NCBI GenBank assembly: GCA_965235115.1
Contig: OZ249436.1
Coordinates: 29,450,001-29,514,000 of the forward strand
DNA from: Laetmonice hystrix
Lineage: Eukaryota
Reading direction: 5' to 3'
DNA length: 64,000 nucleotides
Positions within the stretch are counted from its first letter, which is position 1; each line of letters opens with the position of its first letter. Shown here one piece after another: positions 16,837 through 64,000 of the stretch. A program made the position numbers and the translations under genes. The notes below the pieces were generated by a model. It saw nothing but the letters and a program-made list of their open reading frames with translations, had not been told where the DNA came from and searched no databases.

Positions 16837-16868
<32 letters not shown>

Positions 16869-20067: not shown

Positions 20068-21822
20068 CTGAACCGACTAGGGGGTTATTCATAGACTACT
20101 CCCCCAGACTGAACCGACTAGGGGGTTATTCATGGACTACTCCCCCAGACTGAACCGACTAGGGGGTTATTCATAGACTACTCCCCCAGACTGAACCGAC
20201 TAGGGGGTTATTCATAGACTACCCCCCCAGACTGAACCGACTAGGGGGTTATTCATGGACTACTCCCCCAGACTGAACCGACTAGGGGGTTATTCATAGA
20301 CTACTCCCCCAGACTGAACCGACTAGGGGGTTATTCATAGACTACTCCCCCAGACTGAACCGACTAGGGGGTTATTCATGGACTACTCCCCCAGACTGAA
20401 CCAACTAGGGGGTTATTCATAGACTACTCCCCCAGACTGAACCGACTAGGGGGTTTTTCATGGACTACTCCCCCAGACTGAACCAACTAGGGGGTTATTC
20501 ATAGACTACTCCCCCAGACTGAAACGACTAGGGGGTTATTCATGGACTACTCCCCCAGACTGAACCAACTAGGGGGTTATTCATAGACTACTCCCCCAGA
20601 CTGAACCGACTAGGGGGTTATTCATAGACTACTTCCCCAGACTGAACCGACAAGGGGGTTATGCATGGACTACTTCCCCAGACTGAACCGACTAGGGGGG
20701 TTATTCATGGACTACTCCCCCAGACTGAACCGACTAGGGGTTTTTTCATGGACTACTCCCCCAGACTGAACCAACTAGGGGGTTATTCATGGACTACTCC
20801 CCCAGACTGAACCAACTAGGGGGTTATTCATAGACTACTCCCCCAGACTGAACCGACTAGAAAGGTCTTTCATGGACTACTCCCCCAGACTGAACCAACT
20901 AGGGGGTTATTCATAGACTACTCCCCCAGACTGAACCGACTAGAAAGGTCTTTCATGGACTACTCTCCCAGACTGAACCGACTAGGGGGTTATTTAAGGA
21001 CTACTCCCCCAGACTGAACCGAGTAGGGGGTTATTCATGGACTACTCCCCCAGACTGAACCGACTAGGGGGTTATTCATAGACTACTCCCCCAGACTGAA
21101 CCGACTAGGGGGTTTTTCATGGACTACTCCCCCAGACTGAACCAACTAGGGGGTTATTCATAGACTACTCCCCCAGACTGAACCGACTAGAAAGGTCTTT
21201 CATGGACTACTCCCCCAGACTGAACCAACTAGGGGGTTATTCATAGACTACTCCCCCAGACTGAACCGACTAGAAAGGTCTTTCATGGACTACTCTCCCA
21301 GACTGAACCGACTAGGGGGTTATTTAAGGACTACTCCCCCAGACTGAACCGAGTAGGGGGTTATTCATGGACTACTCCCCCAGACTGAACCGAGTAGGGG
21401 GTTATTCATGGACTACTCCCCCAGACTGAACCGACTAGGGGGTTATTCATAGACTACTCCCCCAGACTGAACCGACTAGGGGTTATTCATGGACTACTCC
21501 CCCAGACTGAACCGACTAGGGGGTTATTCATGGACTACTCCCCCAGACTGAACCGACAAGGGGGTTATTCAGGGACTACTCCCCCAGACTGAACCGACTA
21601 GGGGGTTATTCATAGACTACTCCCCCAGACTGAACCAACTAGGGGGTTATTCATAGACTACTCCCCCAGACTGAACCGACTAGAAAGGTCTTTCATGGAC
21701 TACTCCCCCAGACTGAACCAACTAGGGGGTTATTCATAGACTACTCCCCCAGACTGAACCGACTAGAAAGGTCTTTCATGGACTACTCTCCCAGACTGAA
21801 CCGACTAGGGGGTTATTCATGG
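20068..21822. repeat. Minisatellite, 41-bp unit, about 43 copies
   Basis: Unit gactgaaccgactagggggttattcatagactactccccca, with a 42-bp tagaaaggtctttc variant. Confidence 0.98.
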
Positions 21823-24800
21823 AGATTTGTTGGTAAGACGGTCTTGCCTGTGATGACGTCACTAAGTCTTTTTGGATGGCGTCAATTCTGGGTCGTAGAA
21901 AATAACGTCAAAGTCCTAACTTTTTCTTACCCCTAAATATCCTCCTATATCGTTTAGAAATGATTGTGTAGGTTTAAGGCTCACTGTGCTTTAATTATAT
22001 TTTCCTCGTAATGTTCTCTGTACTTAGACTGTCTTTAAGTAAGGACATGTCAATTAGTCTTCACTATATTGCCGTCTTTGCCGGTTATAATTTCCTCATC
22101 ACAAGGCAATAAATTAGATAAAGAGACGTTCTTTCCTTACGTTTCCAGACATTTTAGAACATGGAGTATCATTTGTTAAATTCAAGATGATTAATAATGA
22201 AACTTGAGATAATATCATTATAGCTTCCAACATTACTTAATACTCGCAGTCGTTGGAAAATTTCATTTGATTCAAGTGAATCAGTCGACACTAGGAAGAG
22301 CTATTTTTAACTGCGCCATGCAAATATTGAATACACGCGGGATCGCTTGCTTCGTTTATTGAATAAAGCAAGTGGCTTCAATAATTTTGCCTTGATTCTA
22401 TGTAAAAAAAACCATGGAGGATGAAAGTTTTGAAACCAATGTCTGGATGAAAAGTTATTTTTCAAAATAATAGATACAAATTTTTAAACGACTAAACCAA
22501 TAAAGCAGGACATTCATTGGTAGCTCAAGTTTCCAATGATATCCATTTTCACAGCAAGTTTGGCAAAATGGAGAATTTTCCAAAGCGAGGGCAAACGTTC
22601 CATATTACGATAAACAGTCAATTAGTCACAAAAGACTACACTTTTTTAATCATAACCATTGCCACACATAAGTCAGGAATTACTTGTGTTTTAATTAGAG
22701 GAGGTTAGAGGGTATTGTATGAATGACTGTGCCATCTCCACATTGAAATCAGGCGAGCCATCTGTTCACAATCTTATGTTATAGGTTGGTATAAAGATGG
22801 AATCCTCGGACGATGGACATACCAATTTGGCATTTCTTTCATGGCGAGGGGGTCGAAACAATGTGGTAAAGACCTAATTAATGTCACAGTATAAATGCGA
22901 AATACATACATTTCTAGGTATACATCTGTGTCATGATGTAATTCGTAGTCTTTACAATCCAAGCTGCATGCCCCCCCCCCACTGATGGGCACTGTTCCTT
23001 GGCGCCATCCCAGACAAGGACCACACAACCAACACTTGTGTCTAGAGTCGTGCGAATCCCTCCCATCGTCTAACAGTAATCAATTTGAACAAATCATATT
23101 CACTGGGCTCGTCACCGGGCCTTGTTGATGTATTTGTAACGGGCCACGACCGATAAACGCGCCCCCGGTCCACAAGCTGTATATATTAAGTACCCCCCAG
23201 AACACCCTCCACCCCCATCCTCCACCGCCACCAGAGCCCACGTGGCTTTGCGTACGACGGATCGACTTAATGCAGGCCCCTGCAAATTGTATTTACTAAA
23301 ATGCGATTGGTTCCGAGTGTCGCTTGTGCCGGGGAAGTCCGCGAACCTATGCAATGAATCAGAATTTGCGTTTCACATTGAGGGGAGAGGATCGCAGATG
23401 ATTTAATGGGGTTTTAGGCAAAGTGACATGCAGGAGGGATGGCGAAAATGCAAACGGCACCTCCTAAAGGCTGGGTTCGAGGAGGCCAGAGGCAGGAGAG
23501 GCACTGGCTACGGGCCAGGCCGAATACTTTAGGCATGTCCTGTGCTATTGTAATGGCCACTCTGTAGCCGGGTCACGGAGCCGGGGTGGGACGAGGCGTC
23601 CACTGAGAGATGGGATGACAGGCCGGGCGAGGGTAGGGCCACAGATATCGTGGGAGAGCAGAGTTTGATTGGAGTATCTTCTAACTCAAGAATTATAAAC
23701 AGTCGGATGTTTAAGTTTTACAAGCTAGTCATTAGACGTATACTGTTAGGGACCTCAATGTATACCGTTAGATTTGTAGTGAGAGCAGCAAAATACAATT
23801 TAACTTAAATGTGAAACACTCTTCTGGTCGAATGAGGGTTGCTTAGTTCCTGCCCAACGTGCTTACACTGTGTTGCCTGGGACCATCGTTTTTACTGTTA
23901 CTGTATGCAAATCAGTATGTTATAGTTAATAAAACAAGTAAATAAATAAGTAAGTATGGGTAAGTATGACGTGTGTGTAGGGTTGTAGGTGCGTGTACAC
24001 TTTTAATCATTAGTTTTGACACCAGATTGACCTGACCCAAATATCACTTTTTACATACTACTTACTATCAAGTAAAATCCTATTTTCACCATGGTTGTTG
24101 CCTTGACTTGGATATAAAACGATTCGAAACAATTTTCATAAAGATCAAAGGGGCTAATTTATAGTTTTCCTACAATTTATATAGGCTTGTGTTTGACTTA
24201 TATTCTTTAAATGGATTGAGTGTCTGCTAAAACTGTCGGGCTGTGAGAAGACTGAAACATACTCTATAGAAGGGAGCCTCTCTCTGTAAGTCATTATAGA
24301 TGCAGTGCCCTCGTGTGTTCCGGGCCGTTAGTCTGACCAATGGTTCCCAGAGTGACAAATGGCGGATCCGTGGTATCGATGGCCTGGACACGGGATAATC
24401 ATGTAGCCATCTGATGCGTGCACAATGATATTCATAACCGCCCAGACATCTGATTGAGGCCGGCTTTCTCGGTCACCGTGGCCGTCCGCCGCTCTCCCGT
24501 CCGCCCGCCGGGCCAGGCGGCCGCCCCGCCGGGGGAGTCGCTCAAGTAACCCCCCCTCTCCGCCCACGTCCCCGGTGTGCTGGCCGGGTCTATAGTTAAC
24601 ACAGGCCGTGGTGACTGTACCCCGGACCGCTCCCATTAGAGACCCGTCCTGCTGATGTCGGGCGGCAACCAGAAGCCATGAAGAGGAGGAAGAGGAGGAA
24701 GAGGAAGGGAGAAGCAGGTTTTTTTTAATAATCCGGCCCGGAGCGTGGCGCCAACTGCCGCTGTCAGGGCTCTGGTCACCGACACGGAGAGTGTCATTAA

Positions 24801-25120: not shown

Positions 25121-25550
25121 NNNNNNNNNNNNNNNNNNNNNNNNNNNNNNNNNNNNNNNNNNNNNNNNNNNNNNNNNNNNNNNNNNNNNNNNNNNNNNNN
25201 NNNNNNNNNNNNNNNNNNNNNNNNNNNNNNNNNNNNNNNNNNNNNNNNNNNNNNNNNNNNNNNNNNNNNNNNNNNNNNNNNNNNNNNNNNNNNNNNNNNN
25301 NNNNNNNNNNNNNNNNNNNNNNNNNNNNNNNNNNNNNNNNNNNNNNNNNNNNNNNNNNNNNNNNNNNNNNNNNNNNNNNNNNNNNNNNNNNNNNNNNNNN
25401 NNNNNNNNNNNNNNNNNNNNNNNNNNNNNNNNNNNNNNNNNNNNNNNNNNNNNNNNNNNNNNNNNNNNNNNNNNNNNNNNNNNNNNNNNNNNNNNNNNNN
25501 NNNNNNNNNNNNNNNNNNNNNNNNNNNNNNNNNNNNNNNNNNNNNNNNNN
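25121..25550. other. Assembly gap (430 N)
   Basis: N run. Confidence 1.
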
Positions 25551-26438: not shown

Positions 26439-26449
26439 TACTACTACTG

Positions 26450-26512
<63 letters not shown>

Positions 26513-26567
26513 CACTACTACTACTACTACCACTACTACTACTGCTACTACAATGTTCTACTACTAC
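26439..26567. repeat. (TAC)n microsatellite running into a gap
   Basis: Direct reading. Confidence 0.96.
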
Positions 26568-26715
26568 NNNNNNNNNNNNNNNNNNNNNNNNNNNNNNNNN
26601 NNNNNNNNNNNNNNNNNNNNNNNNNNNNNNNNNNNNNNNNNNNNNNNNNNNNNNNNNNNNNNNNNNNNNNNNNNNNNNNNNNNNNNNNNNNNNNNNNNNN
26701 NNNNNNNNNNNNNNN
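26568..26715. other. Assembly gap (148 N)
   Basis: N run. Confidence 1.
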
Positions 26716-27376: not shown

Positions 27377-28168
27377 CACCATCCGGCATGACGTCCGGTC
27401 GGTCCCGGCATGTCACCATCCGGTATGACGAACGTCCGGTCGGTCCTAGCATGTCACCATACGGCATGACGTACGTCCGGTCGGTCCTAGCATGTCACCA
27501 GACGGCATGACGTACGTCTGGTCGGCCCCGGCATGTCACCATACGGCATGACGTACGTCCGGTCGGTCCCGGCATGCCACCGTCCGGCATGACGTACGTC
27601 CGGTCGGTCCCGGCATGTCACCGTCCGGCATGACGTACGGCCGGTCGGTCCCGGCATGTCACTATCCAGCATGACGTACGCCTGGTCGGTCCCGGCATGT
27701 CACCATACGGCATGACGTACGGCCGGTCGGTACTAGCATGTCACCATCCGGCATGACGTACGTCCGGTCGGTCCCGGCATGCCACCGTCCGGCATGACGT
27801 ACGTCCGGTCGGTCCCGGCATGTCACCATCCGGCATGACGTACGTCCGGTCGGTCCCGGCATGTCACCATCCGGCATGGCGTACGTCCGGTCGGTCCCGG
27901 CATGCCACCGTCCGGCATGACGTACGTCCGGTCGGTCCCGGCATGCCACCGTCCGGCATGACGTACGTCCGGTCGGTCCTGGCATGCCACCCATCCAGCA
28001 TGACGTACGTCCGGTCGGTCCCGGCATGTCACCATCCGGCATGACGTACGTCCGGTCGGTCCCGGCATGTCACCATCCAGCATGACGTATGTCCGGTCGG
28101 TCCCGGCATGTAACCATCCAGCATGACGTACGTCCGGTCGGTCCTGGCATGCCACCCATCCGGCATGA
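27377..28168. repeat. CpG-rich minisatellite, 41-bp unit, about 19 copies
   Basis: Unit ggcatgacgtacgtccggtcggtcccggcatgtcaccatcc. Confidence 0.97.
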
Positions 28169-30620: not shown

Positions 30621-32435
30621 CTGAGTAACCATTGTCAACGTGGTCACTCTACTGACGGGTCTGAGTAACCATTTTCAACGTGGACAGCAGCAGAGTGACG
30701 GGCCTGAGTAACCATTGTCAACGTGAATAGCAGCAGAAGGACGGGCCTGAGTAGCCATTGTCAACGTGAACAGCAGCAGAGTGACGGGCCTGAGTAACCA
30801 TTGTCAACGTTAACAGCAGCAGAGTGACGGGCCTGAGTAACCATTGTCAACGTGAACAGCAGCAGAGTGACGGGCCTGAGTAACCATTGTCAACGTGAAC
30901 AGCAGTAGAGTGATTGATCTGAGTAACCATTGTCAACGTGGACAGCAGCAGAGTGACGGGCCTGAGTAACCATTGTCAAGGTGAACAGCAGCAGAGTGAC
31001 TGATCTGAGTAACCATTGTCACCGTGAACAGCAGCAGAGTAACGGGCCTGAGTAACCATTGTCAACGTGAACAGCAGCAGAGTGACGGGTCTGGGTAACC
31101 ATTGTCAACGTGAACAGCAGCAGAGTGACGGGCCTGAGTAACCATTGTCAACGTGAACAGCAGCAGAGTGACGGGCCTGAGTAACCATTGTCAACGTGAA
31201 CAGCAGCAGAGTGACGGGCCTGAGTAACCATTGTCAACGTTAACAGCAGCAGAGTGACGGGCCTGAGTAACCATTGTCAACGTGAACAGCAGCAGAGTGA
31301 CGGGCCTGAGTAACCATTGTCAACGTGAACAGCAGTAGAGTGATTGATCTGAGTAACCATTGTCAACGTGAACAGCAGCAGAGTGACGGGCCTGAGTAAC
31401 CATTGTCAACGTGAACAGCAGCAGAGTGACTGATCTGAGTAACCATTGTCAACGTGAACAGCAGCAGAGTGACGGGTCTGAGTAACCATTGTCAACGTGA
31501 ACAGCAGCAGAGTGATAGGTCTGAGTAACCATTGTCAACGTGAACAGCAGCAGAGTGACTGATCTGAGTAACCATTGTCAACGTGAACAGCAGCAGAGTG
31601 ACGGGTCTGGGTAACCATTGTCAACGTGAACAGCAGCAGAGTGACGGGCCTGAGTAACCATTGTCAACGTGAACAGCAGCAGAGTGACGGGCCTGAGTAA
31701 CCATTGTCAACGTGAACAGCAGCAGAGTGACGGGCCTGAGTAACCATTGTCAACGTGAACAGCAGCAGAGTGACGGGCCTGAGTAACCATTGTCAACGTG
31801 AACAGCAGCAGAGTGACGGGCCTGAGTAACCATTGTCAACGTGAACAGCAACAGAGTGACGGGCCTGAGTAACTATTGTCAACGTGAACAGCAGCAGAGT
31901 GACGGGCCTGAGTAACCATTGTCAACGTGAACAGCAGCAGAGTGACTGATCGGAGTAACCGTTGTCAACGTGAACAGCAGTAGAATGACTGATCTGAGTA
32001 ACCATTTTCAACGTGAACAGCAGCAGAATGTCGGGCCTGAGTAACCATTGTCAACGTGAACAGCAGCAGAGTAACGGGCCTGAGTAACCATTGTCAACGT
32101 GAACAGCAGCAGAGTAACGGGCCTGAGTAACCATTGTCAACGTGAACAGCAGCAGAGTGACGGACCTGAGTAACCATTGTCAACGTGAACAGCAGCAGAG
32201 TGACAGGCCTGAGTAACCATTGTCAACGTGAACAGCAGTAGAGTGATTGATCTGAGTAACCATTGTCAACGTGGACAGCAGCAGAGTGACGGGCCTGAGT
32301 AACCATTGTCAACGTGAACAGGAGCAGAGTGACGGGTCTGAATAACCATTGTCAACGTGAACAGCAGCAGAGTGACGGGTCTGAGTAACCATTGTCAACG
32401 TGAACAGCAGCAGAGTAACGGGCCTGAGTAACCAT
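30621..32435. repeat. Minisatellite, 43-bp unit, about 42 copies
   Basis: Unit ctgagtaaccattgtcaacgtgaacagcagcagagtgacgggc. Confidence 0.98.
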
Positions 32436-39550: not shown

Positions 39551-40361
39551 GAGAAAGGTGCAAGAGTATAGCTGCACTCTTTGAGATCGAGGGGAGAAAT
39601 GCCAACTAGAGAACGGTGCATGAGTATGGCTGTACTCTTGGAGATTGAGGGGAGAAATGCCTACCAGAGAACGGTGTAGGAGTATAGCTGTACTCTTGGA
39701 AATGGTGGGGAGAAATGCCTACTAGAGAACGGTGCAGGAGTATAGCTGTACTCTTGGAGATTGAGGGGAGAAATGCCTAACAGAGAACGGTGCAGGAGTA
39801 TAGCTGTACTCTTGGAGATGGTGGGGAGAAATGCCTACCAGAGAACGGTGCAGGAGTATAGCGGCACTCTTGGAGATGGTGGGGAGAAATGCCTACCAGA
39901 GAACGGTGCAGGAGTATAGCTGTACTCTTGGAGATTGAGGGGAGAAATGCCTAACAGAGAACGGTGCAGGAGTATAGCTGTACTCTTGGAGATGGTGGGG
40001 AGAAATGCCTACCAGAGAACGGTGCAGGAGTATAGCTGTACTCTTGGAGATTGAGGGGAGAAATTCCTACCAGAGAACGGTGCAGGAGTAGAGCTGCACT
40101 CCTGGAGATGGTGGGGAGAAATGCCTACCAGAGAACGGTGCAGGAGTAGAGCTGCACTCTTGGAGATTGAGGGGAGAAATGTCTACCAGAGAACGGTGCA
40201 GGAGTATAGCTGCACTCTTGGAGATGGTGGGCAGAAATGCCTACCAGAGAACGGTGCAGGAGTATAGCTACACTCTTGGAGACGGTGGGGAGAAATGGCT
40301 ACCAGAGAACGGTGCAGGAGTAGAGCTGCACTCCTGGAGATGGGGGAGAAAAATGCCTACC
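39551..40361. repeat. Minisatellite, 58-bp unit, about 14 copies
   Basis: Unit agagaacggtgcaggagtatagctgtactcttggagatggtggggagaaatgcctacc. Confidence 0.97.
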
Positions 40362-41647
40362 ATTCACCTTAAAGTGGGGAAGCGCTCCACCTGATCCCGT
40401 AGAGATACAGTAACCCGACAAGTTAATGCGCTCCATACCATCCGGGAAATGGATTAGTGCTCTCATCCTCCTACACCCCTCCCCCACCCCAGGAAGACCC
40501 ATCCCAAAACGACACCCCTGGTTTCCCCTTGCCAACCACCCGCCCCCTCCCAAACAGTGTAAAATTGATTAACTCGGCGTATTACTCGCGATCAACGTTA
40601 ATGAAAGGGGCACGAGAGCTTCCTGGGGACAATTGATATAATTGTGGCAACAAGTATTCAGGTCGGCAAAATCTGATACGGCCTTTGCCCCCGGGGATAT
40701 GGTGTCTGAAGTACTCCATCTAACGGGCCGCAACGCCGGCTGTCCACCGTCGCTAACAGTGGCTAACCACCCCCTGGTCATTATCCATGAAATATAAAAC
40801 TTTGGCACAGGTGTCCACAACCGGACCCAAATTACATTTTAAAATTATATGAAAATCGTTCCCTTGTCTCATCAGCCAATGGTCCGTTTCACGTTTTAAT
40901 AAAGGAAATGATGAAAAGTATCATAAATGGCGCCTCTCGGAATTGAAGTGTACACTTACCGAACAAATAACTCACGTTTTAATTAGTAAATCGACAATTA
41001 GGTTAAAAGTGGTCGCATGTAACTAACCCGATGTTTCATACGTGACTTCCTTGGAAAATTAGACTTTGCAATAATAAAATCGCATTCTAGTATCAAAAAT
41101 ACATTAAATGGAACCGAAACATTTAGCAGCCGGTGTATTCAGTTACCTATTATGATACATTTAATGGCATCATTTGGGGAAAAACTGTTGATCTTTCCAA
41201 TATCTAAATGCACCGGGATTGTCAAATTACAGGTTTAACTGTATCCGATTAAAGTAGTTCTGTAACATTTTGTGAAGGATTGCCGGAGATGATTTAACTA
41301 GGCCTAAACTGGGAAGCCTACTGTGTAAGGGGGGCTACAACCCCTGCACCAACTTTAACACACAATGCACCTTCAAACCTAATGCGTGGGGTCTATACGT
41401 ATTTGTTTCAATGTGATTTTGCAACTTCCGATTCAGCTTTGACTTTTGCGTCGTTTTCTTTTATTAAGCGAACTCGGTCTTGTGCCGTGGTCGACCGCTG
41501 TATAACAGTGATCAATGCTAGAAACGCTGAGAGGTCGACACGAGCAAATTGACTGCCTGCCGACCGGAGCCTGCGATAACGTGTCACACGTGTCAGCGAA
41601 CAGATGGCAAATGGTGCCGGTTGTTCACGTTTCATTGGCGCCCCCCT

Positions 41648-43700: not shown

Positions 43701-45710
43701 ATGGAGAATTCATCGGCCATGATGGATGTGGCGAAAGCTGAGACTGATGTACGGGAAGTGACGTCACCAAGACTTCCGTCACCGGAGAATGTCGGGAGTC
43801 CCAAAACGATTGGCCCAGCCACAAGCACGGCACCCATCGTTCGGACGACAGAGGTCACGTCACCCGAACCCAGGCAAGACACTCCCAAACCAACCAAACC
43901 ACCGAAAAACCACCACCACCAACAACCACCACCACAACCGTTTGTACGCCAGAATACGGTCGGAAGCGTGATGCTTGCAGGGGTAAATATAGTTTCCCTG
44001 GTGATCGACGGGAAAGAGAGGTTGTGCCTCGCGCAGATCTCGAACACGCTGTTGAAGGCTTACAGTTACAACGAGATTCACAATCGTCGCGTCGCGCTAG
44101 GAATCACGTGCGTACAATGTACTCCCGTTCAGCTCGAGATCTTACGACGCGCAGGCGCGATGCCTGTTTCCTCCCGACGCTGCGGGATGATCACGAAGCG
44201 CGAGGCCGAACGTCTCGTTAAGTCGTTCCTCGAGGATACATGCCCCCCGAGACTTCCAGACAACTTCTCGTTCGACGTCAGCCACGAGTGTGGGTGGGGA
44301 GGCCGGGGAAGCTTCATCCCTTCCCGTTACAACAGCTCACGCGCCAAATGCATCAAATGTTCGTTCTGTAACATGTTCTTCTCGCCAAACAAGTTCATTT
44401 TTCACTATCACCGCACGCCGGAATCCAAGTACAACCACCCGGACGCAGCCAACTTCAACTCATGGCGTCGCCATTTGAAGCTATCAGATGAACATCCGGG
44501 CGAAGACCTGCTCCACGCATGGGAAGACGTCAAGGCCATGTTCAACGGGGGAAGTCGGAAACGAGTGCTGAACTCGCACATACAGTCTCATCACCACTCC
44601 AGGTCGCACTCGCCCAGCAGTTCAACCCCACAACATTCCCTGTCACATCCATCTCGATCACCCTCCTCCATATCCCAGCCTTCTCCCGATTACTGTAAGA
44701 GACCCAAGATGGACTCGGAGCGCTTACCGTCCCCCGGATGTCAGATGCCACCAGTAACGTCCCAGAATCAGCAGCAGGCCGGCTTCCAGTATCCGGTGTT
44801 CCCGGTGCCAAACAAGGTCGTCCCCATGAAGTCTGTACCAGCCCACCCAGCCTTTACCGTACCTTTTTCCTACGACAAACCCCTTCCAGAGGGTCAGGCC
44901 GTTATGAAGGCGACCCACCCCGGGCCCTGGCCTAGCAGTATACCAGACACTTACTACCCGCCCTACGAAATGATCTGGGCCAAGCACCTTGGACTGACCG
45001 CTCCAGAGACGAGCTTCGCCCACAGGACCCTAACGATTGGGACTCATGGCGACCCCGGCGCAGTGTCCCCTAGAGGACACCACCCGGTTCTAAGTCCGTC
45101 AAGCAGCCGAGACGGACGTCAGAGCGTCGACACGTCCTGCGGCGAGGAACCAATGAGATGTGGCGACATGAATGACGTCAGTTACCAGATGACGTTTGTC
45201 ACGGGAGACGAGAACGACAGAAAGCGCCACCTCTCGGCCTTCAAACCAGTCGCTCACAAATATTCTCATCACGAGTTCGACTCGTGCTCCGAGAGATTGC
45301 GAGAGGAAATGTCTGAGGCTTCGACCGAGGCTGACTTCCGGGAGGAAAGCGAGGCTGGTAGTGACAACGAGGAAGTTGACGTAGATACCGTGGAGGAGGG
45401 CGTCGACTTCAAAATCAGAATGTACAAAACTGACGAACAACTGGAAGAAAACAACAATGACCCTACAACTACCTGCGACGACGCTAAACAAGAGCCGACC
45501 CACAACACCTCAGATCGTATGGAACAAGGACGAAATGAATCCAAGTCTGATGCCTTAAACCAAACTGCACCTCTTGTACTCAAGGCACCCGCAAGTCCGG
45601 CATCGATGACAGGAAGCGTAACTAGCACTGCGTCTCATGCTCACGATCTTCCCGACGACCAAGGGAAGTCGGACCGGAACCAAGCAAGGCCAACAATAAC
45701 ACAAAGACTC
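43701..45710 (+). CDS. SKOR: SKOR coding exon 1 (670 codons; Ski/Sno and SAND domains)
   Basis: ATG at 43701 with an in-frame TAA at 43689-43691. Phase-0 GTAAGT donor at 45711. The ORF track reads on to 45881 through the intron. Confidence 0.93.
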
Positions 45711-48700
45711 GTAAGTATTGCATTTTCATTTCACGCACACGACCAAATAAATTACCCGCGTAAATTGATGGCGACGATCAAATTCGGCTCCTTGATCATA
45801 TTGAATGAAATACACCTCTGCTGCGCTCGGTACGTCTATCCTCCCGGGGCCAGAGAACTCCTGCGAGCGTCAGTTTTCTAAATGGCAAACATCACAAGAT
45901 GTGACAGGCAATAGCTTATTACCAAGCCGGCCAGGCCTGAGGCAGAGACCGACTCTAAGACAGAGGACTGCCTTACTGGTAATTTGTCAATTATGTTTTA
46001 ACGGACCGTTAGATTCCAACAGACACGCACGGTTCGCGAGAGTCCGCCCTAGGTTACCGAAACACATTCTCGTGAATTGTGAATCACTTATCTTAATAAG
46101 GCGCTCATTATTTATTTATATTTACCTTGTCAGCGGCGATTTGTAAAGTACTTTTGTCGCACCACGACTCGGCAAGCTTAAATAGTATGCGTTACAGACT
46201 ACGATGAAATATTGATAGGAAGTGAACAATGCTAGGTAATGTTTGACAGGGGATGCGTGTGAAGGCGGGGGCTGGAATTACAGTGGCCGGCGGGTGATGG
46301 ACAAGTTATCGTGAATCAATCGACCGGTACTTAATGACTTCCACTTCGCGCAGGCGCAGCACGAGAACGCCGCATTAAACAATTGTTCATTTCGCAGTCG
46401 CCTTCATTTCCTTTGCGTTCCTTGCGTGCTTACAAAGTCTGCGTTCAGAGAAAAAGCTCATGCCGGCATTTTTGGGACGCTCTTGAAACATAACAATTTA
46501 CGCCGTCGATTATTCCACTGTAGATAATCTTACTTGATGTACCCATATATAGAACGCTGGATTATTAACCGGGCCCCCTCGTCCGGAACAGTTTCCCTGG
46601 AAACACTGTGTTAATTTGGCGACTGTATCATGTATGCGAATCCCAATTTCATTACGGAGTAATGCACACTTGTCTCAAAAGATTTCATTAAAGGAAACAC
46701 AGATATGATCACTTAAACATAAAAACTATTTTAATATCAAAAGAACAGATGCGTGATAGTTAAGCCTGATCATAGCACTCGATTGCATATTGCCGGCATG
46801 CCATGTTGCAATTTCCGCTAACCCTTCAAATAGCAATCCTGGTATGGTATGCAAATTTAACTCTGCTAATCCAATCAGTTCCGGGATTAAGCATTTATAT
46901 AATCCACCCTTTCATGTAATAAGAGTATTTTGTAATTAAACACCCCAGTCTTTTAATCATCTCTAACTGCATGTTAACTATGTGTAACTAATCATTCAGA
47001 GGTATTAAAGGGTGGTTCAGTTTGTTCTATTGAATTCTGAAGGATCTATCGTGTCTATGCTGACAGATCCCGAGCCCCACGGCTGGTGTGACAGCAGTGT
47101 TCAAGCCAACGTCCCCCACCGTCGAAGGTAAGGATAATCTCATTAATTTAGACAGCGACATCCCGCCGACATAATTGGGTCTCGGCGTGGAAAGGGAAGC
47201 CACAGCGATCATCGCTAAACCCTCGGCACCAAAGGCTCGTTCGTTCTTTGCATGTATTACTCGGGGATGTAGACTCGACATGCACAAACCAACGGACAAT
47301 AGAAATTATGATTTAATTGGATCAAGGTACAGGGAGCCTCACAAATGAACAGCTAGGCGTGCAAGGACAAACTTCACGGTTCTTTTCGTTGTTTACGTAA
47401 TGAGAGATCTTTATGGATCAACGTTTACCATATTCTTGGTTTCATACGTTTTAAAAGTTCCTTTGTTATTTAACGAGTTAAATCTTGCCGGTGAATGGGA
47501 CAAGTCGACAGGATCACATTTCCTTGTCCCAATTGTGTTTTCCACGTCTAGATAACTTGTTAATTGAATGCAAATTAAAAGATGAACATGGTCTTGCAGG
47601 CCACGAGGAGAGGGAGTCGGCACTACTCAAGGACTTGGCCTCACTGACTAAAGGTAACCACGTCACTACAAACTCGAGTCCCCTATTTGCATTTTGAGGA
47701 GGGATCATTCATTATTTCAATTGACAATGTAATTACGAATCAATTACAACGAGTCCTTGATGGGAGACGACATGTAATTCTTTCTGAATTGTTATGTAAA
47801 CGTTTACATTCGGCGTATTTCCGTCGATCAGCGTCGGTGCCACCCTGTTAATGGTATGGTAATAGAGCCTCGGTTGCATTGAATCAGGCCGCTAATGTCA
47901 TTGACAACTAGAAACGAGGGGCTATGGCTAAGAAGGCTGGATAATGAGGTAAAATACTCAAATCCACATGAGGGAGGCGGGGAGGGGTCGCCGACTGCCC
48001 GGATTGACCGCGGACTCGACCAAAGTGACTAACAGGGCTTTAGTTCATGACTATATTAACTTTCCGATGGTACTTGCGGTAATAACTCCAGCACATCTGG
48101 ACATTTGACAATAGTCAGGGTGACTAATGCGTATTCTATTGACGACTGTATCTTGGGGAACACCAGTTGAAACCGTCTGACTCAGTGACAACAGAACAAT
48201 GTGTATATATTAAACCGGATTTTCCTTTTGTCTGTGCACACAGATGATCTACGCGAGGAACTGGTACAAGAAATTCGTGTCCGAAAGAAGATTGAGGATG
48301 ACTGTCGTATGATAAAAGGTCAGCATAATATTACCAGAGACGCACCGTGAAATGATCTGCTATATATTATAGGGTGATTAAATACAGACCTGAGAATTAG
48401 GTTCTATAAGCCATCCTTTCACTTTTTTGAGCTATTGGCGATTAAATCTTTACCATTGCATCAATTATGCAGATATACAAGAATTTTTAGGGCAAAACAA
48501 TTAAAAGCATATTAATATTTCTGCCAACCCAGCGAAATCTATATAAAAGAGACATACATGTATTCAAATAGAACCTCAGTGTGGCTGGAATCGAACGGCA
48601 TGCATAACCCAAATTTAAACTGAATGTCACTTCAGCCCCAGTAATTTTCATTTATCGTATTTTTATATAACAGAATAAATAAGATGATTACATAAAGTTG

Positions 48701-51025
48701 GGAGGTCTTAAAAAAAACTCGATCTGCGCTTGCACTGAACCCTCAAAGATAGGGTGTCTTAAGTCATACGGCAAACTTCATCTCCATATTTCATCACCAC
48801 TGCCGTGTTTCATTAGAAGATGTATATCATCATAGGTCCCCTTGGAACCTAATTGGGGCAATATTATGTGAAGATGCAGGGTGATTATCTGTTTATATTA
48901 ACCGACGATCCGTCTGACATTAGAGGGCTGTCAGTGATAATCTTCTGGTCTATTTGTCTTCATACAGAAACTTTCCAAGAACAGGTTAAGCGAGAGTTGG
49001 CTTACCGGGAGGAGATGGCCAAACAACTACAGGTTGTCCGAGGTAAGATAGGTGTCTTCATACAGAAACTTTCCAAGAACAGGTTAAGCGAGAGTTGGCT
49101 TACCGGGAGGAGAGGGCTAAACAACTACAGGTTGTCCGAGGTAAGATAGGTGTCTTCATATAGAAACTTTCCCAGATTCAGGTTAAGCGAGAGTTGGCTT
49201 ACCGGTAGGAGATGGCCAAACAACTACAGGTTGTCCGAGGTAAGATAGGTGTCTTCATACAGAAACTTTCCAAGATTCAGGTTAAGCGAGAGTTGGCTTA
49301 CCGGGAGGAGATGGCCAAACAACTACAGGTTGTCCGAGGTAAGATAGGTGTCTTCATACAGAAACTTTCCAAGAACAGGTTAAGCGAGAGTTGGCTTACC
49401 GGGAGGAGATGGCTAAACAACTACAGGTTGTCCGAGGTAAGATAGGTGTCTTCATACAGAAACTTTCCCAGATTCAGGTTAAGCGAGAGTTGGCTTACCG
49501 GGAGGAGATGGCTAAACAACTACAGGTTGTCCGAGGTAAGATAGGTGTCTTCATACAGAAACTTTCCAAGATTCAGGTTAAGCGAGAGTTGGCTTACCGG
49601 GAGGAGATGGCCAAACAACTACAGGTTGTCCGAGGTAAGATAGGTGTCTTCATACAGAAACTTTCCAAGAACAGGTTTAGTGAGAGTTACCGGGAGGAGA
49701 TGGCCAAACAACTACAGGTTGTTCGAGGAAAGATAGGTGTCTTCATACAGAAACTTTCCAAGATTCAGGTTAAGCGAGAGTTGGCTTACCGGGAGGAGAT
49801 GGCCAAACAACTACAGGTTGTCCGAGGTAAGATAGGTGTCTTCATACAGAAACTTTCCAAGAACAGGTTTAGTGAGAGTAACCGGGAGGAGATGGCCAAA
49901 CAACTACAGGTTGTTCGAGGAAAGATAGGTGTCTTCATACAGAAACTTTCCCAGATTCAGGTTAAGCGAGAGTTGGCTTACCGGGAGGAGATGGCCAAAC
50001 AACTACAGGTTGTCCGAGGTAAGATAGGTGTCTTCATACAGAAACTTTCCAAGAACAGGTTTAGTGAGAGTTACCGGGAGGAGATGGCCAAACAACTACA
50101 GGTTGTTCGAGGAAAGATAGGTGTCTTCATACAGAAACTTTCCCAGATTCAGGTTAAGCGAGAGTTGGCCAACCAATTACAGTTGTCCGAGGTATAGTTG
50201 CTGGTGTCAGATCGGGATGCTATTAATCAGTTTTAACAGACTCAACATGTTTTGTTTTTGTAAACACGGGAGCTACACAGGTCCGGGGTGTCCTAAACCT
50301 TGGTTAAATGTATTCTGGGGGATATAATTTTTAAATGTGGTCGGGGGGGGACCTACACCAGTGAACCAATTCAGTCTGATAGTACGCATGATCAATCATT
50401 CGCCATTCAACGTTTAAAAAGGTGTTATATAAATAAAGTAGTGATGTAGTCAATTAAGATTTTATAATAAAAATATAAATCCGTTATCCTGTAATGACAA
50501 GTGAATGTTTAATATCCATATTTCTTAATCGTATTTTTTCATTGTTATACAGAAACCTTATGTCATGAGTTGGACCAGGAAAGGAAAGTGCGATTTTCCC
50601 TGCAGCAGAAATTAAAAGGTATTTATCACTTTGATTTATCCAAAACTTATTCTTTCACGTACTTTCCTTGGTTTCCAGTTCTCTTTGCTGACTGGAAGAA
50701 TTAACAGAGCTATTGCGTTAAGACAATCGTACATATTAAATAGTACTATTAGATGCCAATGTACGGTGCTCCATCAATTCCAGTTGACTATACATAAATT
50801 CAGTACGCTATTTTCATAAGCCCATATTAACATACAAAGTCTTAAACATAACCACCTATACATATTAATCGGTATAGACGTTTCATGCCTGTGCATACAC
50901 TGTAGTCTAATTATAATATGTCTCTTTCAGAAGCCCACGACGCTCTGCACAACTTCTCGTGTAAGATGCTCGCCTCTCGCCAGTGTTCCGAGTGCAGCTT
51001 TAAGGAACCAATGATGCCACGATGA
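43701..51025 (+). CDS. SKOR: SKI family transcriptional corepressor (SKOR1/2, Fussel/Corl orthologue); spliced CDS span, 7 coding exons, 827 aa
   Basis: Contains a Ski/Sno/Dac domain (LVIDGKERLCLAQISNTLL...RRCGMITKREAERL) and a SAND-like SMAD4-binding region (HECGWGGRGSFIPSRYNSSRAKCIKC...FSPNKFIFHYHR). Also has the SKOR-specific PDAANFNSWRRHLKL and WEDVKAMFNGGSRKR motifs and the C-terminal QVKRELAYREEM...ELDQERK...EAHDALHNFSCKML coiled coil. Exon phases are consistent and the exons sum to 2484 nt = 828 codons including the stop. Confidence 0.95.
47067..47127 (+). CDS. SKOR: SKOR coding exon 2 (IPSPTAGVTAVFKPTSPTVE), inferred
   Basis: tgacAG acceptor at 47065-47066 and GTAAGG donor at 47128. 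The 61-nt exon supplies the phase 0-to-1 change needed between exon 1 and exon 3. There is no homology support. Confidence 0.62.
47552..47653 (+). CDS. SKOR: SKOR coding exon 3 (DNLLIECK...KDLASLTK)
   Basis: Pyrimidine-rich acceptor ending tctAG at 47551 and GTAACC donor at 47654; 102 nt, phase 1-1. The KDLASLTK end resembles the residues preceding the vertebrate SKOR coiled coil (recalled from memory). Confidence 0.75.
48244..48318 (+). CDS. SKOR: SKOR coding exon 4 (DDLREELVQEIRVRKKIEDDCRMIK)
   Basis: tttccttttgtctgtgcacacAG acceptor and GTCAGC donor at 48319; 75 nt, phase 1-1. Matches the start of the SKOR coiled coil. Confidence 0.88.
48955..50191 (+). repeat. Tandem array of SKOR exon 5 plus 23-nt spacer; 13 copies, units of 98/99/93 bp
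   Basis: Copy starts at 48968, 49066, 49164, 49263, 49362, 49460, 49559, 49658, 49751, 49850, 49943, 50042 and 50135. The consensus spacer is gtaagataggtgtcttcatacag. Confidence 0.97.
48968..49042 (+). CDS. SKOR: SKOR coding exon 5, first copy (ETFQEQVKRELAYREEMAKQLQVVR)
   Basis: Carries the conserved KRELAYREEM motif; 75 nt, phase 1-1. It is the only copy in the array with a unique upstream pyrimidine tract. GTAAGA donor at 49043. Confidence 0.85.
50553..50618 (+). CDS. SKOR: SKOR coding exon 6 (ETLCHELDQERKVRFSLQQKLK)
   Basis: ttttttcattgttatacAG acceptor and GT donor at 50619; 66 nt, phase 1-1; conserved SKOR sequence. Confidence 0.92.
50931..51025 (+). CDS. SKOR: SKOR terminal coding exon 7 (EAHDALHNFSCKMLASRQCSECSFKEPMMPR*)
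   Basis: tctctttcAG acceptor and the conserved SKOR C-terminus. TGA at 51023-51025 is followed by a second stop, TAA. Confidence 0.92.
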
Positions 51026-52055
51026 TAAGTCACGTGATTTAGTCAATGTCACATTTCTCTCACCCACCACCACCACCACCGCCGCCACCAGCCCCACCTA
51101 CAGGATTAATTTATTTATTTTTCGTTAATAATCACCCATTGGACTGTTAAAGCATACAGAGGACTTTCAGCCCTTTGATTAGGCTTACACACTATGACAC
51201 ACGGGATAACGTAATGATAGAATGGAGTCAGTGCATACAATGCATAGAACATAATGGACATTTATATGCAGTTGTTTGAAGAACTGGTTGATGGTGTCGA
51301 CATCAAAGAGCACACTCCAACTGTGGTCAGTTCCTGAAGTCGCTTTACAGAGTATATAGAGAAGTAATGTGTGCCGTATACATGGTTATTCTCTAACAAA
51401 TGTATTTGTTGTGATACCATTATATATTCGTAAAGTACAGTCCTGATGTTTACAAGGAGAACTGGTATAATGTGTACAGCAGTGTATAGCTGTAAGATTA
51501 TGGGTGCTTTCATAGAAGTGAATGTTTTCAATTCGAGTAATAGTAAAATGGCTAACAAATATAAATCATAGGATTCTGAATGAAGTTCATGATATGCATG
51601 TAATATATATTATATATGTTATATTTGTTTACCCCATGTGAAACAAGCAGATATACAGGAAAGGGTTTAATTAAACCACGGAATTTAGGTGGCGGAGCGA
51701 GTTTCAAACATAGAGCGGGATGGGGCGAACAATGTTACTGAAGATGTTAGATCGGCTTGGGTTGGGAGGGGGGGGGGGGTTGTATCTGTATGTACATGTA
51801 TGTATGTTAATATATATTGTAAGAACATTTCCTACTTCTCTATCATATAGAGAGACACTATATAGAGAGTATTAATATTTTACATAACTATAATATGTCA
51901 CCTTGTACAGCTGTGTATAATAGAGATTGCAATAAACTACATCATTGGAAACACAACACCAGATTCGAAACAAACTATTTGTAGTCTGTGATTTTATTAC
52001 GATTTATGCCAAGTACTGTTAATTTATTAAACGTGCAGTAGCCTAAAGGAAGTTC

Positions 52056-61078: not shown

Positions 61079-61306
61079 TAAGTTCAGTGCCCTTCCGGTC
61101 CCCGCCAGTCTGGCTCTCTCATTTAAAGTTCAGTGCCCTTCCGGTCCCCGCCAGTCTGGCTCTCTCATTTAAAGTTCAGTGCTCTTCCGGTCCCTGCCAG
61201 TCTGGCTCTCTCATTTAAAGTTCAGTGCCCTTCCGGTCCCCGCCAGTCTGGCTCTCTCATTTAAAGTTCAGTGCCCTTCCGGTCCCTGCCAGTCTGGCTC
61301 TCTCAT
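61079..61306. repeat. Minisatellite, 46-bp unit, about 5 copies
   Basis: Unit aagttcagtgcccttccggtccccgccagtctggctctctcattta. Confidence 0.95.
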
Positions 61307-64000
61307 TAAGAGGGAAACATCAGGTCGGGCTATAGCAGGAGAACAAACTAATCGACGTCTAGGACTACCAGAGCTACGCCAACTGGAGAACAATAATTGT
61401 TAACCTTTCCATAAAACTGATATTAAGTGTTACAGCACTCAATACTTGTAATTCCATCTACATGTATATCTATAATCTGGCCTCAAACGTGAAGCATGGT
61501 ATCCTCCATTTGTCTATAAAAATTAGGGGCTTATCTATCTCCACAGTTGAACCCTTTCTTTTAGTTCTCTATGAAGTACAAGTTTAGTTAAACCTATATA
61601 AGTCATACTCATCGTACGTTAAGGTGGTTTAATAGCCGATACAACAAGAAAAAATAGATTCTAAGTGATACCTAATTGGAGCTAGTTATACCAGAAAAGC
61701 CTGATCATTTGGTGTAACCTTTACCCACACGCCTCTATACATGGCGTATTCCGTTCCCGATGCCTCCCAATGCTAACCCACCTCCCTACCGAACGACTCT
61801 GGAGACAGACTGCCGAATCTAGCGGTGATGAGTCGGGGGTGTCGGCCAGTATGGATGACCACTGGCTGCAGGGTGCTTTGCCTGTCAATGTGGGGTCGGG
61901 TCTGTCGTGGCCTGTCTACCTCCAATGTTTTCCTAATTCGTCCTAATTCAACGTCCCTCGATAACACATACTTCACTGTCGCCCGGTAATGGATGACGGG
62001 GTCTATACGTAAGCAAGGCAATGACTGTTATTCTCGACTTAGCATCTCTTGGTCTCAAGGCGCGCCACAGGAGCCTGCCAACGTAATTAAGGTCTGCATG
62101 TGAGCCAGGCAGAAGGAAATGATGAAAATATATCATAGCCGGCCCGGTATTCACTAAAATTTGTCGCATGACAAACACGATGCACCAACTGATTCATTTG
62201 CTTGTCAATTGGAACGTCAATTTGTGGCCTCAGAGAAATATCCACGTCATATCCACTGGATTTGACGGCAGGATTTTGGCGAAGAGCAATAATTAAATCT
62301 AGAGGATTGCGTGCAAGGCGCTGGGAGATCCAACTCAGACCGACTAGTTAGTTAACTTTATAATCAAAATACACAGCGGTTACATCAACGTCTGAGACCC
62401 CGCTAATTGATTCCAGTGAATAACGACTTCAATTAGGTCGCCCGGGTATAATAATTAATTTGTATCAGAATGCAGATCAAGATAATCCCGTATTAAAATT
62501 ACATATGTATGACAGAGACACAGAGGGCTCGCGACACCACCGCGGGAATTGATAATTATTTGCAAATGGACGAATCAATACAATCAAAAAGCCATGAATA
62601 CAAATTCGCTTAAATATTTTATCCATGTATCTATTCCGGGCCGGGGTTTCAATCAAATCGGGCAAATTTGTTCAGGATTTGATGATCTATCACTGGCAGT
62701 CATGAAAAGTATCGCATGTGGTCTGCGACGCGCGCCAATAATTTAAGTAAATATTCACCAATAAAAGATTGGGGTGAAATTGAGATGGGACACCGACATG
62801 AGGTGCCCGGATATGGGAGATTCGGCCATGTTCGAACAGATTAATCTTTATTTCTTTCAATATTTGATAGCAGCGAGTAGGAGATAAAATATCCATGAGA
62901 AAATTGAATATAATAGCAATTTACAAAGCGTGATCGGCCATATCATTTTGGTGGTCGTGAGGCGGACAATAAGAAGCTCGCCAGTGGCCCTCATGTTGTG
63001 TTTGTCTGCCGACCATCCGTGGTCTGCCCACCGTATTCAACGCTTGTTTGCGCATGTTTAACAAACACTCGATTGGATGACTTTCAGAAAGAGTCGGCCC
63101 CAGTGTGGATTTCCTATACAGTACAGAGCTGGGCGCGAAAGCCCAAGTGCGGTCCTAATCAAACGGCATTATTTACCAAATTAGGCACTGTTAATGACTT
63201 AATCTTTGCGGCTTATTTACTAAACAAGGTGCTGTATTCAAACAGGACATGTACTGCAATTAGGGAAAGACAATAATAATTATACTATGGATTCTGTGTA
63301 ACGGAAACATTCAGACTGTCCAGGGTTATGGAGCTGCATGCGACTAGCCTATACTTTACCTGTGCATCTTTTATTCACTTATATGGGGGGGGGGGGGGGG
63401 TGTCAGAAAACTGACAACTTAATCTCATTCAAAAATACACGTCCACGTGTACATCATTATGTACGCATACACTGTGGCATTATTGTGAAAACAATTCCTT
63501 AATTTCCTTAACGTAAAAAAAATACATTAAGGGTTACACCTTTGCCCTTATTGTAAAAGTTTTAACATATTAAGGGTTACAACTTGAGCCTTAATGTAAA
63601 ACTGTTTTACCTTAAAGCAGAGTACCAACAAACTGGTGACCATGAAAAATTATATTTGGATGTGTCTAGTGACATTACATTGCATCGTCTAACACATACT
63701 GTAGCACATAGATGCTTTATGCTCAAAATAGGTTATACATGCGTAATGCATAATGTATGTATTATAATGTAGATTTATACATACACACATGTAGATACAT
63801 ATCAAGCAGACTATTCTGCTTTCATATCAATCTCAAGGATTATAATGTATTAAGTCGTAGCTGGCGTGACTTGCCGTGCTTTTCTCAGAAGTTGTACTTA
63901 ATACCCGCCGCTATTATTCTTATTTTCTGTCTATGACAAAAAGTGTGCGAAGCGACGACACAGAAAGAGTTTTTAGTATCCCCTCTTATATTTTATTTAA

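What the first reader, a model, noticed from the sequence alone, without database searches (positions are those of the whole stretch)
48955..50191. A conserved coding exon of SKOR, with its splice sites, has become a 13-copy minisatellite
Seen: the 75-nt exon encoding (E)TFQEQVKRELAYREEMAKQLQVVR is repeated 13 times head to tail, separated by a 23-nt spacer that starts with a donor (GTAAGA) and ends with an acceptor (catacAG). Copies 1, 2 (M>R) and 5 are intact 75-nt phase 1-1 exons. Copies 3, 4, 6, 7, 9 and 11 are 76 nt, copies 8, 10 and 12 are 70 nt, and copy 13 is degenerate. Known: this exon encodes part of the C-terminal coiled coil of SKOR/Fussel proteins and is normally single. Inference: this is an exon-containing VNTR in a developmental transcription-factor gene, so copy number may vary between individuals and alter splicing.
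Basis: partly seen in the sequence, partly recalled or inferred. Interest (0 to 1): 0.88.

Follow-up and report, generated by a model that had tools for sequence, protein, structure and literature searches.

The report
Whole-exon minisatellite inside a SKOR gene
A 75-base coding exon of an invertebrate SKOR (Ski-family corepressor) gene, plus 23 bases of its intron ends, is copied 13 times head to tail. Ten copies are already broken and only the first keeps a normal splice-acceptor context. It is most likely a tolerated "mirage"-type intronic minisatellite in a genome full of such repeats, not a working multi-exon array.

Summary
At 48955-50191 (+) there is a 12.5-13 copy tandem array with units of 98, 99 or 93 nt. 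Each unit is the conserved 75-nt, phase 1-1 coiled-coil exon of a SKOR orthologue plus a 23-nt spacer running from GTAAGA to CATACAG.

Evidence that the array is real and recent:
- The unit is unique to this locus in the 627-Mb assembly.
- Read k-mer depth matches the assembled copy number.
- Seven relatives carry the exon once, including the closest one (74% identical protein).

- Only copies 1, 2 (M>R) and 5 can code.
- Six copies carry a +1 frameshift with an immediate stop.
- Copy 13 is degenerate.
- The 23-nt spacer is too short to be excised.
- Internal acceptors lack a branch-point context and have half the pyrimidine tract.

The most likely mRNA is exon 4, copy 1, exon 6. No RNA run and no second individual exist, so splicing and copy-number variation are untested.

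The window holds at least 8 minisatellites. The scan has already found junction-copying minisatellites elsewhere in this genome. The class is published as amphioxus "mirages" and the human F7 IVS7 VNTR. This is the whole-exon extreme of a known kind.

The parts
43701..45714 (+). Large SKOR coding exon, from the ATG, with the Ski/Sno DHD and the c-SKI SMAD4-binding domain. The 3' end is inferred at the nested donor GTAA|GTATTG.
   Evidence: Pfam PF02437 at E 2.8e-36 and PF08782 at E 1.2e-26. Best named hits are SKOR1/2 proteins. The GTAAGTAT donor is conserved in L008 at the same phase, and only the nested GT gives the phase 1 that the next exon needs.
47600..47653 (+). Small 54-nt exon, phase 1-1, encoding ...HEERESALLKDLASLTK. 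It was found here.
   Evidence: tblastx shows conservation with L008 7999-8085. Splice sites were read. It completes an uninterrupted 792-codon CDS.
48244..48318 (+).
   Evidence: tblastn to the Capitella and Lamellibrachia C-termini. Sequence and splice sites were read.
48955..50191 (+). The whole tandem array: 13 units of exon plus 23-nt spacer. Higher-order structure is (A-B-B)x2 at 296 nt, then (C-B)x3 at 192 nt.
   Evidence: TRF, unit alignment, unique in the genome, read k-mer depth 4.8-6.5x the flanks against 6.0 expected.
48968..49042 (+). Copy 1: intact 75-nt exon with the native upstream intron. Predicted to be the exon actually used.
   Evidence: The acceptor context has a pyrimidine fraction of 0.70 and UnAy motifs at -33 and -30. 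Joining it to the flanking exons gives a full in-frame CDS.
49066..49140 (+). Copy 2: 75 nt and in frame, but M>R at a conserved hydrophobic position.
   Evidence: Orthologues have M, V or I at this position.
49362..49436 (+). Copy 5: intact 75-nt exon with one synonymous change.
49164..49338 (+). Copies 3 and 4: 76-nt type B pseudo-exons with a +1 frameshift and an immediate TAA. Copy 3 also has a TATAG acceptor and an extra stop.
49460..49634 (+). Copies 6 and 7: 76-nt type B pseudo-exons.
49658..50111 (+). Copies 8 to 12, alternating type C and type B. Type C is 70 nt with two stops, a 5-nt deletion and the donor GT changed to GA. Type B is 76 nt.
50135..50191 (+). Copy 13: 57-nt degenerate edge copy, joined to the original downstream intron (donor GTATAG).
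50553..50618 (+). 66-nt exon downstream of the array, phase 1-1, encoding (E)TLCHELDQERKVRFSLQQKLK.
   Evidence: tblastn. Splice sites were read.
50931..51028 (+). Last coding exon, encoding (E)AHDALHNFSCKMLASRQCSECSFKEPMMPR, followed by TGA TAA.
   Evidence: tblastn at E 1e-15 to Lineus SKOR. Sequence read.

Best explanation
This is a young, whole-exon 'mirage'. A short tandem duplication took in the entire 75-nt exon, about 10 nt of the start of the downstream intron and about 13 nt of the end of the upstream intron. Unequal exchange then amplified it to 13 copies, in a genome that makes minisatellites very readily. The gene still works through copy 1, which alone keeps the native upstream intron with its branch-point region and full pyrimidine tract. 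The exon 4 donor pairs with the copy 1 acceptor. The copy 1 donor, the most upstream of the identical donors, pairs with the strong acceptor of the next real exon, about 1.5 kb away. Copies 2-13 then lie inside that intron as silent or rarely used pseudo-exons that are decaying neutrally. Adjacent copies cannot both be included, because a 23-nt spacer cannot be excised. Shown: the anatomy, the decay of the copies, uniqueness in the genome, single copy in relatives, and the repeat-rich context. Inferred: which copy is spliced, and the duplication mechanism.
For: The array and all copy states were read from the sequence. Joining exon 4, copy 1 and exon 6 gives an uninterrupted 792-codon SKOR CDS whose C-terminus matches the orthologues. 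Ten of 13 copies are dead as exons, and the frameshifted type B and the donor-less type C were themselves amplified, to 7 and 3 copies. That is expected if copies beyond the first are not under coding selection. The copy 1 acceptor has a pyrimidine fraction of 0.70 and UnAy motifs at -30 and -33. The internal acceptors have 0.50 and no such motif between -18 and -40. Introns under about 40 nt are never excised in C. elegans (PMC4165533). In the human F7 IVS7 VNTR only the most upstream of the identical donors is used (PMC1557585). Amphioxus mirages leave splicing normal, and their edge copies escape homogenisation as copy 13 does here (PMC3087553 and PMC3902484). The window has at least 8 minisatellites and the paralogue locus has 7 in 17 kb. 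The exon is single in L008/L009, P0121, P0125 and four named species. Higher-order repeats differ by about 1.4% (4 of 296 positions), similar to the local heterozygosity, so the array is young.
Against: There is no RNA evidence at all, so which copy is used is inferred. Nine internal copies keep a GTAAGA donor, the best match to consensus among this gene's donors (7 of 8). All internal copies keep an AG acceptor, so some inclusion is plausible. Copy 5 is still perfectly intact, and copy 2 is nearly so. My branch-point and pyrimidine scoring is a crude motif count, not a model calibrated for this species.
Confidence: 0.65

Rival explanations
1. The array is used in splicing. Internal copies are included at an appreciable rate in one of three ways: mutually exclusive choice among copies 1, 2 and 5; in-frame double inclusion (for example copies 1 and 5, adding 25 residues to the helix); or poison pseudo-exons of type B that bring a stop and send the mRNA to nonsense-mediated decay. 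In the last case, array length would tune SKOR output.
For: Nine internal copies keep strong GTAAGA donors and all keep AG acceptors. Non-adjacent copies are at least 121 nt apart, a workable intron length. The exon is symmetric (phase 1-1, 75 nt), so extra intact copies keep the frame. Exon pairs that are mutually exclusive because their introns are too short are known (PMC4165533).
Against: Internal acceptors lack branch-point-like motifs and have half the pyrimidine tract. Published junction minisatellites do not disturb splicing. The copies are decaying rather than diversifying, and only one amino-acid variant exists, at a conserved core position. A 25-residue insert is not a whole number of heptads, and the region is one continuous 86-residue helix.
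Confidence: 0.2
2. This SKOR gene is under relaxed constraint or is on its way to becoming a pseudogene, because a second SKOR paralogue exists. The array would then be damage that is no longer removed by selection.
For: A second SKOR gene with an open 618-codon frame, 82% identical over the DHD and SMAD-binding region, lies about 15 Mb away on the same chromosome.
Against: Every other exon of this gene is intact, with canonical splice sites and conserved residues, and gives a clean 792-codon CDS. It is the paralogue that looks more diverged, and its exon 4/5 equivalents are not recognisable. Copy 1 is perfectly intact.
Confidence: 0.07
3. The array is an assembly artefact, produced by over-expansion or mis-joining of reads at a single exon.
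For: No contig in the three runs spans the array. All the runs come from one sample, probably the one that was assembled.
Against: A 128-nt unitig covering 48955-49082 has depth 139 against 22-29 in the flanks, which is 4.8-6.5x. The assembled array predicts 6.0x. Flank contigs run into both edges of the array. The array has three structured variant types in higher-order repeats, which is typical of real minisatellites. The assembly is chromosome-scale, with 35 contigs.
Confidence: 0.04
4. The spacers are retained and the array is translated as a repeat protein. From the copy 5 acceptor to the donors of copies 6, 7, 9 or 11 the native frame stays open, because the 99-nt and 93-nt units are multiples of 3. 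That would add 33- and 31-residue repeats to the helix.
For: The frame is open for 284 codons over 49343-50194. Both length variants (+1 and -5 nt) restore divisibility by 3, and several differences between copies are synonymous in this frame.
Against: An open frame is expected fairly often for a tandem unit that is a multiple of 3 and is largely made of coding sequence. Copy 3 has stops in this frame. This reading needs the weak copy 5 acceptor. No similar repeat protein exists among 1.84 billion representatives. The Pfam hits to this ORF have no significant individual stretch and look like repeat artefacts.
Confidence: 0.03

Closest known systems
Amphioxus 'mirages': minisatellite-like tandem duplications of exon-intron boundaries in Adh3, globin, TnC and PGBD5 (PMC3087553, PMC3902484)
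   Same: The unit is 10-160 nt and copies the gene's own splice junction. The copies carry AG or GT signals. There is concerted evolution inside the array and a divergent edge copy. The genomes concerned are rich in such repeats. Splicing is reported to stay normal.
   Different: Published mirages span one boundary and only part of the exon. Here the unit takes in the whole exon and both boundaries, so each copy is a complete pseudo-exon. The host is a lophotrochozoan, probably an annelid, not a cephalochordate. Neither normal splicing nor haplotype length variation has been shown here.
Human F7 intron 7 37-bp VNTR (PMC1557585)
   Same: A minisatellite whose first unit spans the exon-intron boundary, giving a row of identical donor sites. 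Only the most upstream donor is used.
   Different: The F7 repeat copies the donor only, with no acceptor and no whole exon. In F7 the polymorphism and the splicing outcome are shown experimentally. Here they are not.
Mutually exclusive exon clusters made by tandem exon duplication, including pairs separated by introns too short to excise, such as C. elegans egl-15 5A/5B at 14 nt and let-2 9/10 at 30 nt (PMC4165533)
   Same: Tandem homologous exons of equal length and phase. Spacing below the minimum intron length physically forbids joining neighbouring copies.
   Different: Those clusters hold 2-4 diverged, functional alternatives under selection. Here 10 of 13 copies are dead, the live ones encode the same peptide, and there is no evidence of alternative use.
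Exon-bearing VNTRs in humans such as LPA kringle IV-2 (from my own knowledge, not checked here)
   Same: Whole exons with their splice sites repeated in tandem inside a gene.
   Different: The LPA unit is about 5.5 kb with full-size introns, and all its copies are spliced in and translated. Here the unit is 98 nt with a 23-nt spacer that cannot be spliced out.

Membership tests
SKOR / Fussel / CORL subfamily of Ski/Sno corepressors (the host gene) | N-terminal Ski/Sno Dachshund-homology domain | tested here: met
   PF02437 at E 2.8e-36, residues 81-180 of the large exon.
SKOR / Fussel / CORL subfamily of Ski/Sno corepressors (the host gene) | c-SKI SMAD4-binding (SAND-like, zinc-binding) domain | tested here: met
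   PF08782 at E 1.2e-26, full profile length.
SKOR / Fussel / CORL subfamily of Ski/Sno corepressors (the host gene) | Closest named relatives are SKOR1/2 rather than Ski, SnoN or Dach | tested here: met
   All named hits among the top 120 that carry a functional name are 'SKI family transcriptional corepressor 1/2'; the rest are generic (hypothetical, uncharacterized or domain-only names). No tree was built.
SKOR / Fussel / CORL subfamily of Ski/Sno corepressors (the host gene) | C-terminal helical coiled-coil region that contains the repeated exon | tested here: met
   The exon peptide aligns to the conserved motif. AlphaFold2 on the orthologue C-termini gives one continuous helix over residues 14-99 with pLDDT 96-99. 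A coiled coil at the Fussel C-terminus is described in PMC3413677. Oligomerisation was not tested.
Minisatellite / VNTR | Head-to-tail array of units of roughly 10-100 nt | tested here: met
   TRF gives period 99 and 12.5 copies.
Minisatellite / VNTR | Copy number varies between alleles or individuals | not testable with these tools
   Only three runs of one sample exist, kept as short contigs, and none spans the array.
'Mirage' (junction-spanning minisatellite) | The repeat unit spans an exon-intron boundary of the host gene | tested here: met
   The unit contains both the acceptor and the donor boundary of the exon.
'Mirage' (junction-spanning minisatellite) | Regular splicing of the host mRNA is maintained | not testable with these tools
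   No RNA run holds this gene. Acceptor contexts favour copy 1.
Mutually exclusive exon cluster | Tandem homologous exons of the same length and phase, all able to code | tested here: not met
   Only 3 of 13 copies are in frame. The others have frameshifts, stops or no donor.
Mutually exclusive exon cluster | A mechanism that forbids joint inclusion of neighbouring exons | tested here: met
   The 23-nt spacer is below the roughly 40-nt minimum intron size (PMC4165533).
Mutually exclusive exon cluster | Exactly one exon of the cluster is found in each mRNA, with different copies used | not testable with these tools
   No RNA data.

The most novel reading that the evidence does not exclude
The array acts as a copy-number-dependent splicing dial on a neuronal transcriptional corepressor. 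The many intact donors and acceptors draw a fraction of transcripts into stop-carrying pseudo-exons, which are then degraded, or occasionally into an in-frame double exon. Alleles with different array lengths would then give different SKOR doses. This would be a nascent exon cluster caught within roughly one coalescence time of its birth.
Probability: 0.12. Interest if true: 0.6.

Novelty: new member of a known kind. Interest (0 to 1): 0.35.

Why it matters
This is a natural experiment in splice-site choice. Thirteen near-identical acceptors (one of them CAG>TAG) and ten identical donors sit in a row inside an essential-looking developmental gene. Only the sequence context outside the repeat distinguishes the first copy.

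If copy 1 alone is used, the 'first site wins' and branch-point-anchored scanning models, established for human F7, extend to a complete exon in a distant animal lineage.

The array also shows the raw material of tandem exon duplication at a very early stage, before selection has either removed the copies or turned them into alternative exons. And it extends the 'mirage' phenomenon from partial junction copies to a whole exon.

The practical consequence is for annotation. Gene predictors may pick the wrong copy, or several copies, in repeat-rich invertebrate genomes.

Tried and rejected
**RNA evidence.** Two run searches, one on the array region and one on the 2-kb coding exon, found no RNA run, only three DNA runs of one sample. 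Splicing could therefore not be observed.

**Copy number from reads.** Logan contigs break inside the array, so no piece spans it. Only a k-mer depth comparison was possible. Depth in most array bins was unusable because multi-mapping contigs were skipped.

**Closest relative's DNA.** The P0001 contig could not be fetched because the file is too large. Its exon 5 was recovered only as the read-through ORF P0121.

**Search for other arrays of this motif.** An exhaustive HMMER search with the 284-residue read-through ORF gave only weak coiled-coil hits and single-exon ORFs.

**Pfam hits to the read-through ORF.** DUF7461, HTH_69, ADP-ribosyl exotoxin and others have zero significant individual stretches. 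I rejected them as repeat-inflated scores.

**Exon 4/5 equivalents in the second SKOR paralogue.** They were not found by tblastn or by motif search.

**Big exon ending at the strong GTAAGT donor (45711).** I rejected this because it gives phase 0, while the next conserved exon needs phase 1, in both this genome and L008. The nested GT four bases on fits. An undetected extra exon is not excluded.

**Exact duplication junction.** It could not be placed to the base. The spacer is about 10 nt of downstream-intron start plus 13-16 nt of upstream-intron end, with only a short shared TGTC or TAG at the join.
Full report
**1. The observation**

The region 48955-50191 is a genuine tandem array. Tandem Repeats Finder gives period 99, 12.5 copies, 92% matches and score 2080, with alternative periods of 192 and 296 nt. 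I split the array at the repeated acceptor and aligned the units. This gives 13 units of three types:

- Type A: 75-nt exon plus 23-nt spacer. Copies 1, 2 and 5.
- Type B: 76-nt exon, GAACAGG changed to GATTCAGG. Copies 3, 4, 6, 7, 9, 11 and the degenerate copy 13.
- Type C: 70-nt exon, with a 5-nt deletion and four substitutions. Copies 8, 10 and 12.

- All three type C copies have lost the donor (GAAAGA).
- The acceptor of copy 3 is TATAG.
- Every B and C copy runs into a stop within a few codons when entered in the native phase.

The order A A B B A B B C B C B C B, together with the 296-nt and 192-nt periods, shows two higher-order repeats, (A-B-B)x2 and (C-B)x3. That is the usual signature of repeated unequal exchange.

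**2. The gene**

The array lies in a SKOR orthologue on the + strand.

- A 2-kb exon starting at the ATG (43701) carries the Ski/Sno DHD (E 2.8e-36) and the c-SKI SMAD4-binding domain (E 1.2e-26).
- The best named relatives are SKI family transcriptional corepressors 1 and 2 of nemerteans, annelids, molluscs, brachiopods and vertebrates.
- tblastn with orthologue C-termini locates exons at 48244-48318, the array, 50553-50618 and 50931-51028. All are phase 1-1 with canonical splice sites.
- Comparison with the relative's locus L008 revealed one more conserved 54-nt exon at 47600-47653.
- With the nested donor GTAA|GTATTG, conserved at the same phase in L008, and copy 1 of the repeated exon, the gene assembles into an uninterrupted 792-codon CDS. 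Its C-terminus matches the orthologues residue for residue.
- AlphaFold2 on the orthologue C-termini predicts one continuous helix of 86 residues (pLDDT 96-99) that includes the repeated exon's 25 residues. This fits the coiled coil described for Fussel (PMC3413677).

**3. Real, unique and recent**

- The 196-nt double unit matches nothing else in the 627-Mb, 35-contig assembly, so it is not a dispersed repeat.
- Three DNA runs of one sample hold the region. Contigs from both unique flanks run into the array.
- A 128-nt unitig over 48955-49082 has depth 139, against 22-29 in the flanks. The assembled array predicts a mean 31-mer multiplicity of 6.0 for that unitig, and the observed ratio is 4.8-6.5. 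The copy number is therefore about right, at least averaged over the two haplotypes.
- The exon is single in Lineus, Capitella, Lamellibrachia and Haliotis proteins.
- It is single in the loci L008/L009 of an unnamed relative, which have no tandem repeat at all.
- It is single in the closest relative found (74% identical protein). There the read-through ORF P0121 shows intron, one exon, then unique intron. It is also single in P0125.
- An exhaustive HMMER scan of 1.84 billion representatives found no other ORF with this motif in tandem.
- The higher-order repeats differ at 4 of 296 positions, similar to the heterozygosity seen in the flanks. The amplification is young.

**4. How it most likely works**

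Four arguments point to copy 1 as the exon that is used.

- Only about 13 nt of the upstream intron were duplicated. The copy 1 acceptor therefore has its native context, with a pyrimidine fraction of 0.70 and UnAy motifs at -30 and -33. The internal acceptors sit behind exon sequence and a donor, with a fraction of 0.50 and no such motif in the usual branch-point range.
- The 23-nt spacer is far below the roughly 40-nt minimum intron. In C. elegans, exon pairs 14 and 30 nt apart are never joined (PMC4165533). Neighbouring copies are therefore mutually exclusive.
- In the human F7 IVS7 VNTR, only the most upstream of a row of identical donors is chosen (PMC1557585). Amphioxus mirages leave splicing normal (PMC3087553 and PMC3902484).
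- The pattern of decay fits neutrality beyond the first copy. Frameshifted and donor-less variants were themselves amplified. Copy 2 has an arginine at a conserved hydrophobic position. The edge copy 13, which carries the original downstream intron, is the most degenerate.

I therefore predict exon 4, copy 1, exon 6 as the main mRNA, with copies 2-13 inside a 1.5-kb intron. I give this 0.65. It is an inference: no RNA run exists for this gene.

**5. Context and comparison**

The window alone holds at least eight separate minisatellites, with periods of 35-99 nt and up to 43 copies. The locus of a second SKOR paralogue has seven in 17 kb.

Earlier notes of this scan report many minisatellites in other parts of this same genome that copy exon-intron junctions, and they point to the 'mirage' literature. 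I checked those papers myself.

The present array meets the defining feature of a mirage, a unit that spans an exon-intron boundary. It is the extreme case in which the unit swallows a whole small exon and both boundaries. It fails the test for a functional mutually exclusive exon cluster, because most copies cannot code.

**6. Rivals**

- Some use of internal copies, as alternative exons, double inclusion or poison exons: 0.20.
- Relaxed constraint because of the paralogue: 0.07.
- Assembly artefact: 0.04.
- Translation through retained spacers: 0.03. The 99-nt and 93-nt units are multiples of 3, and the frame stays open for 284 codons from copy 5. I regard this as a by-product of a largely coding unit.

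**7. Verdict**

This is a new member of a known kind, a whole-exon mirage or tandem exon amplification. It is of moderate interest, mainly as a natural test of splice-site choice and as a warning for gene annotation. Copy-number variation and any effect on splicing remain untested.

Noticed in passing
G000:C1:44717898-44718536 (- strand); loci L011, L013, L014: There is a second SKOR paralogue about 15 Mb away on the same chromosome. It is 82% identical over the DHD and SMAD-binding region and has an open 618-codon exon. Its last two C-terminal exons are recognisable, but equivalents of the 75-nt exons 4 and 5 were not found.
   Followed up: partly
window 45744-45923, and a weaker block at 46823-46918: These intronic blocks just after the large exon are conserved with L008 6166-6345 and 7239-7334. 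They are also conserved with the read-through tail of P0001. They score on both strands, so they are probably conserved non-coding elements rather than exons.
   Followed up: no
window 8605-9342, 10082-10346, 20064-21823, 27377-28168, 30621-32435, 39551-40362, 61080-61307: Seven further minisatellites with periods of 35-58 nt and 5-43 copies. Together with the SKOR array, about 12% of the window is minisatellite.
   Followed up: partly
window 45711-45718 and L008 6125-6132: The strong donor GTAAGT ending the large exon is at phase 0 in both species, yet the next conserved exon needs phase 1. A nested GT four bases downstream (GTAA|GTAT) resolves this in both. The alternative is an undetected small exon.
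   Followed up: partly
window 48458-48834 and 50294-50403: The flanks of the array are heterozygous in the sequenced sample. There are about 6 substitutions and several small indels in about 560 nt in one run's contig, so a second haplotype exists whose array length is unknown.
   Followed up: no
window 48957-48975 and 50542-50560: The repeated exon and the next exon both begin AAAC(T/C)TT behind an ATACAG acceptor. The three consecutive exons (75, 75 and 66 nt) are all phase 1-1 helical segments. This is possibly a trace of much older exon duplication within the coiled coil.
   Followed up: no
window 16047-16981: A purine-rich low-complexity block (GC skew 0.35, AT skew 0.27) gives long spurious open frames on both strands.
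   Followed up: no
window 25121-25550 and 26568-26715: Two runs of N. The second abuts a (TAC)n microsatellite at 26439-26567.
   Followed up: no
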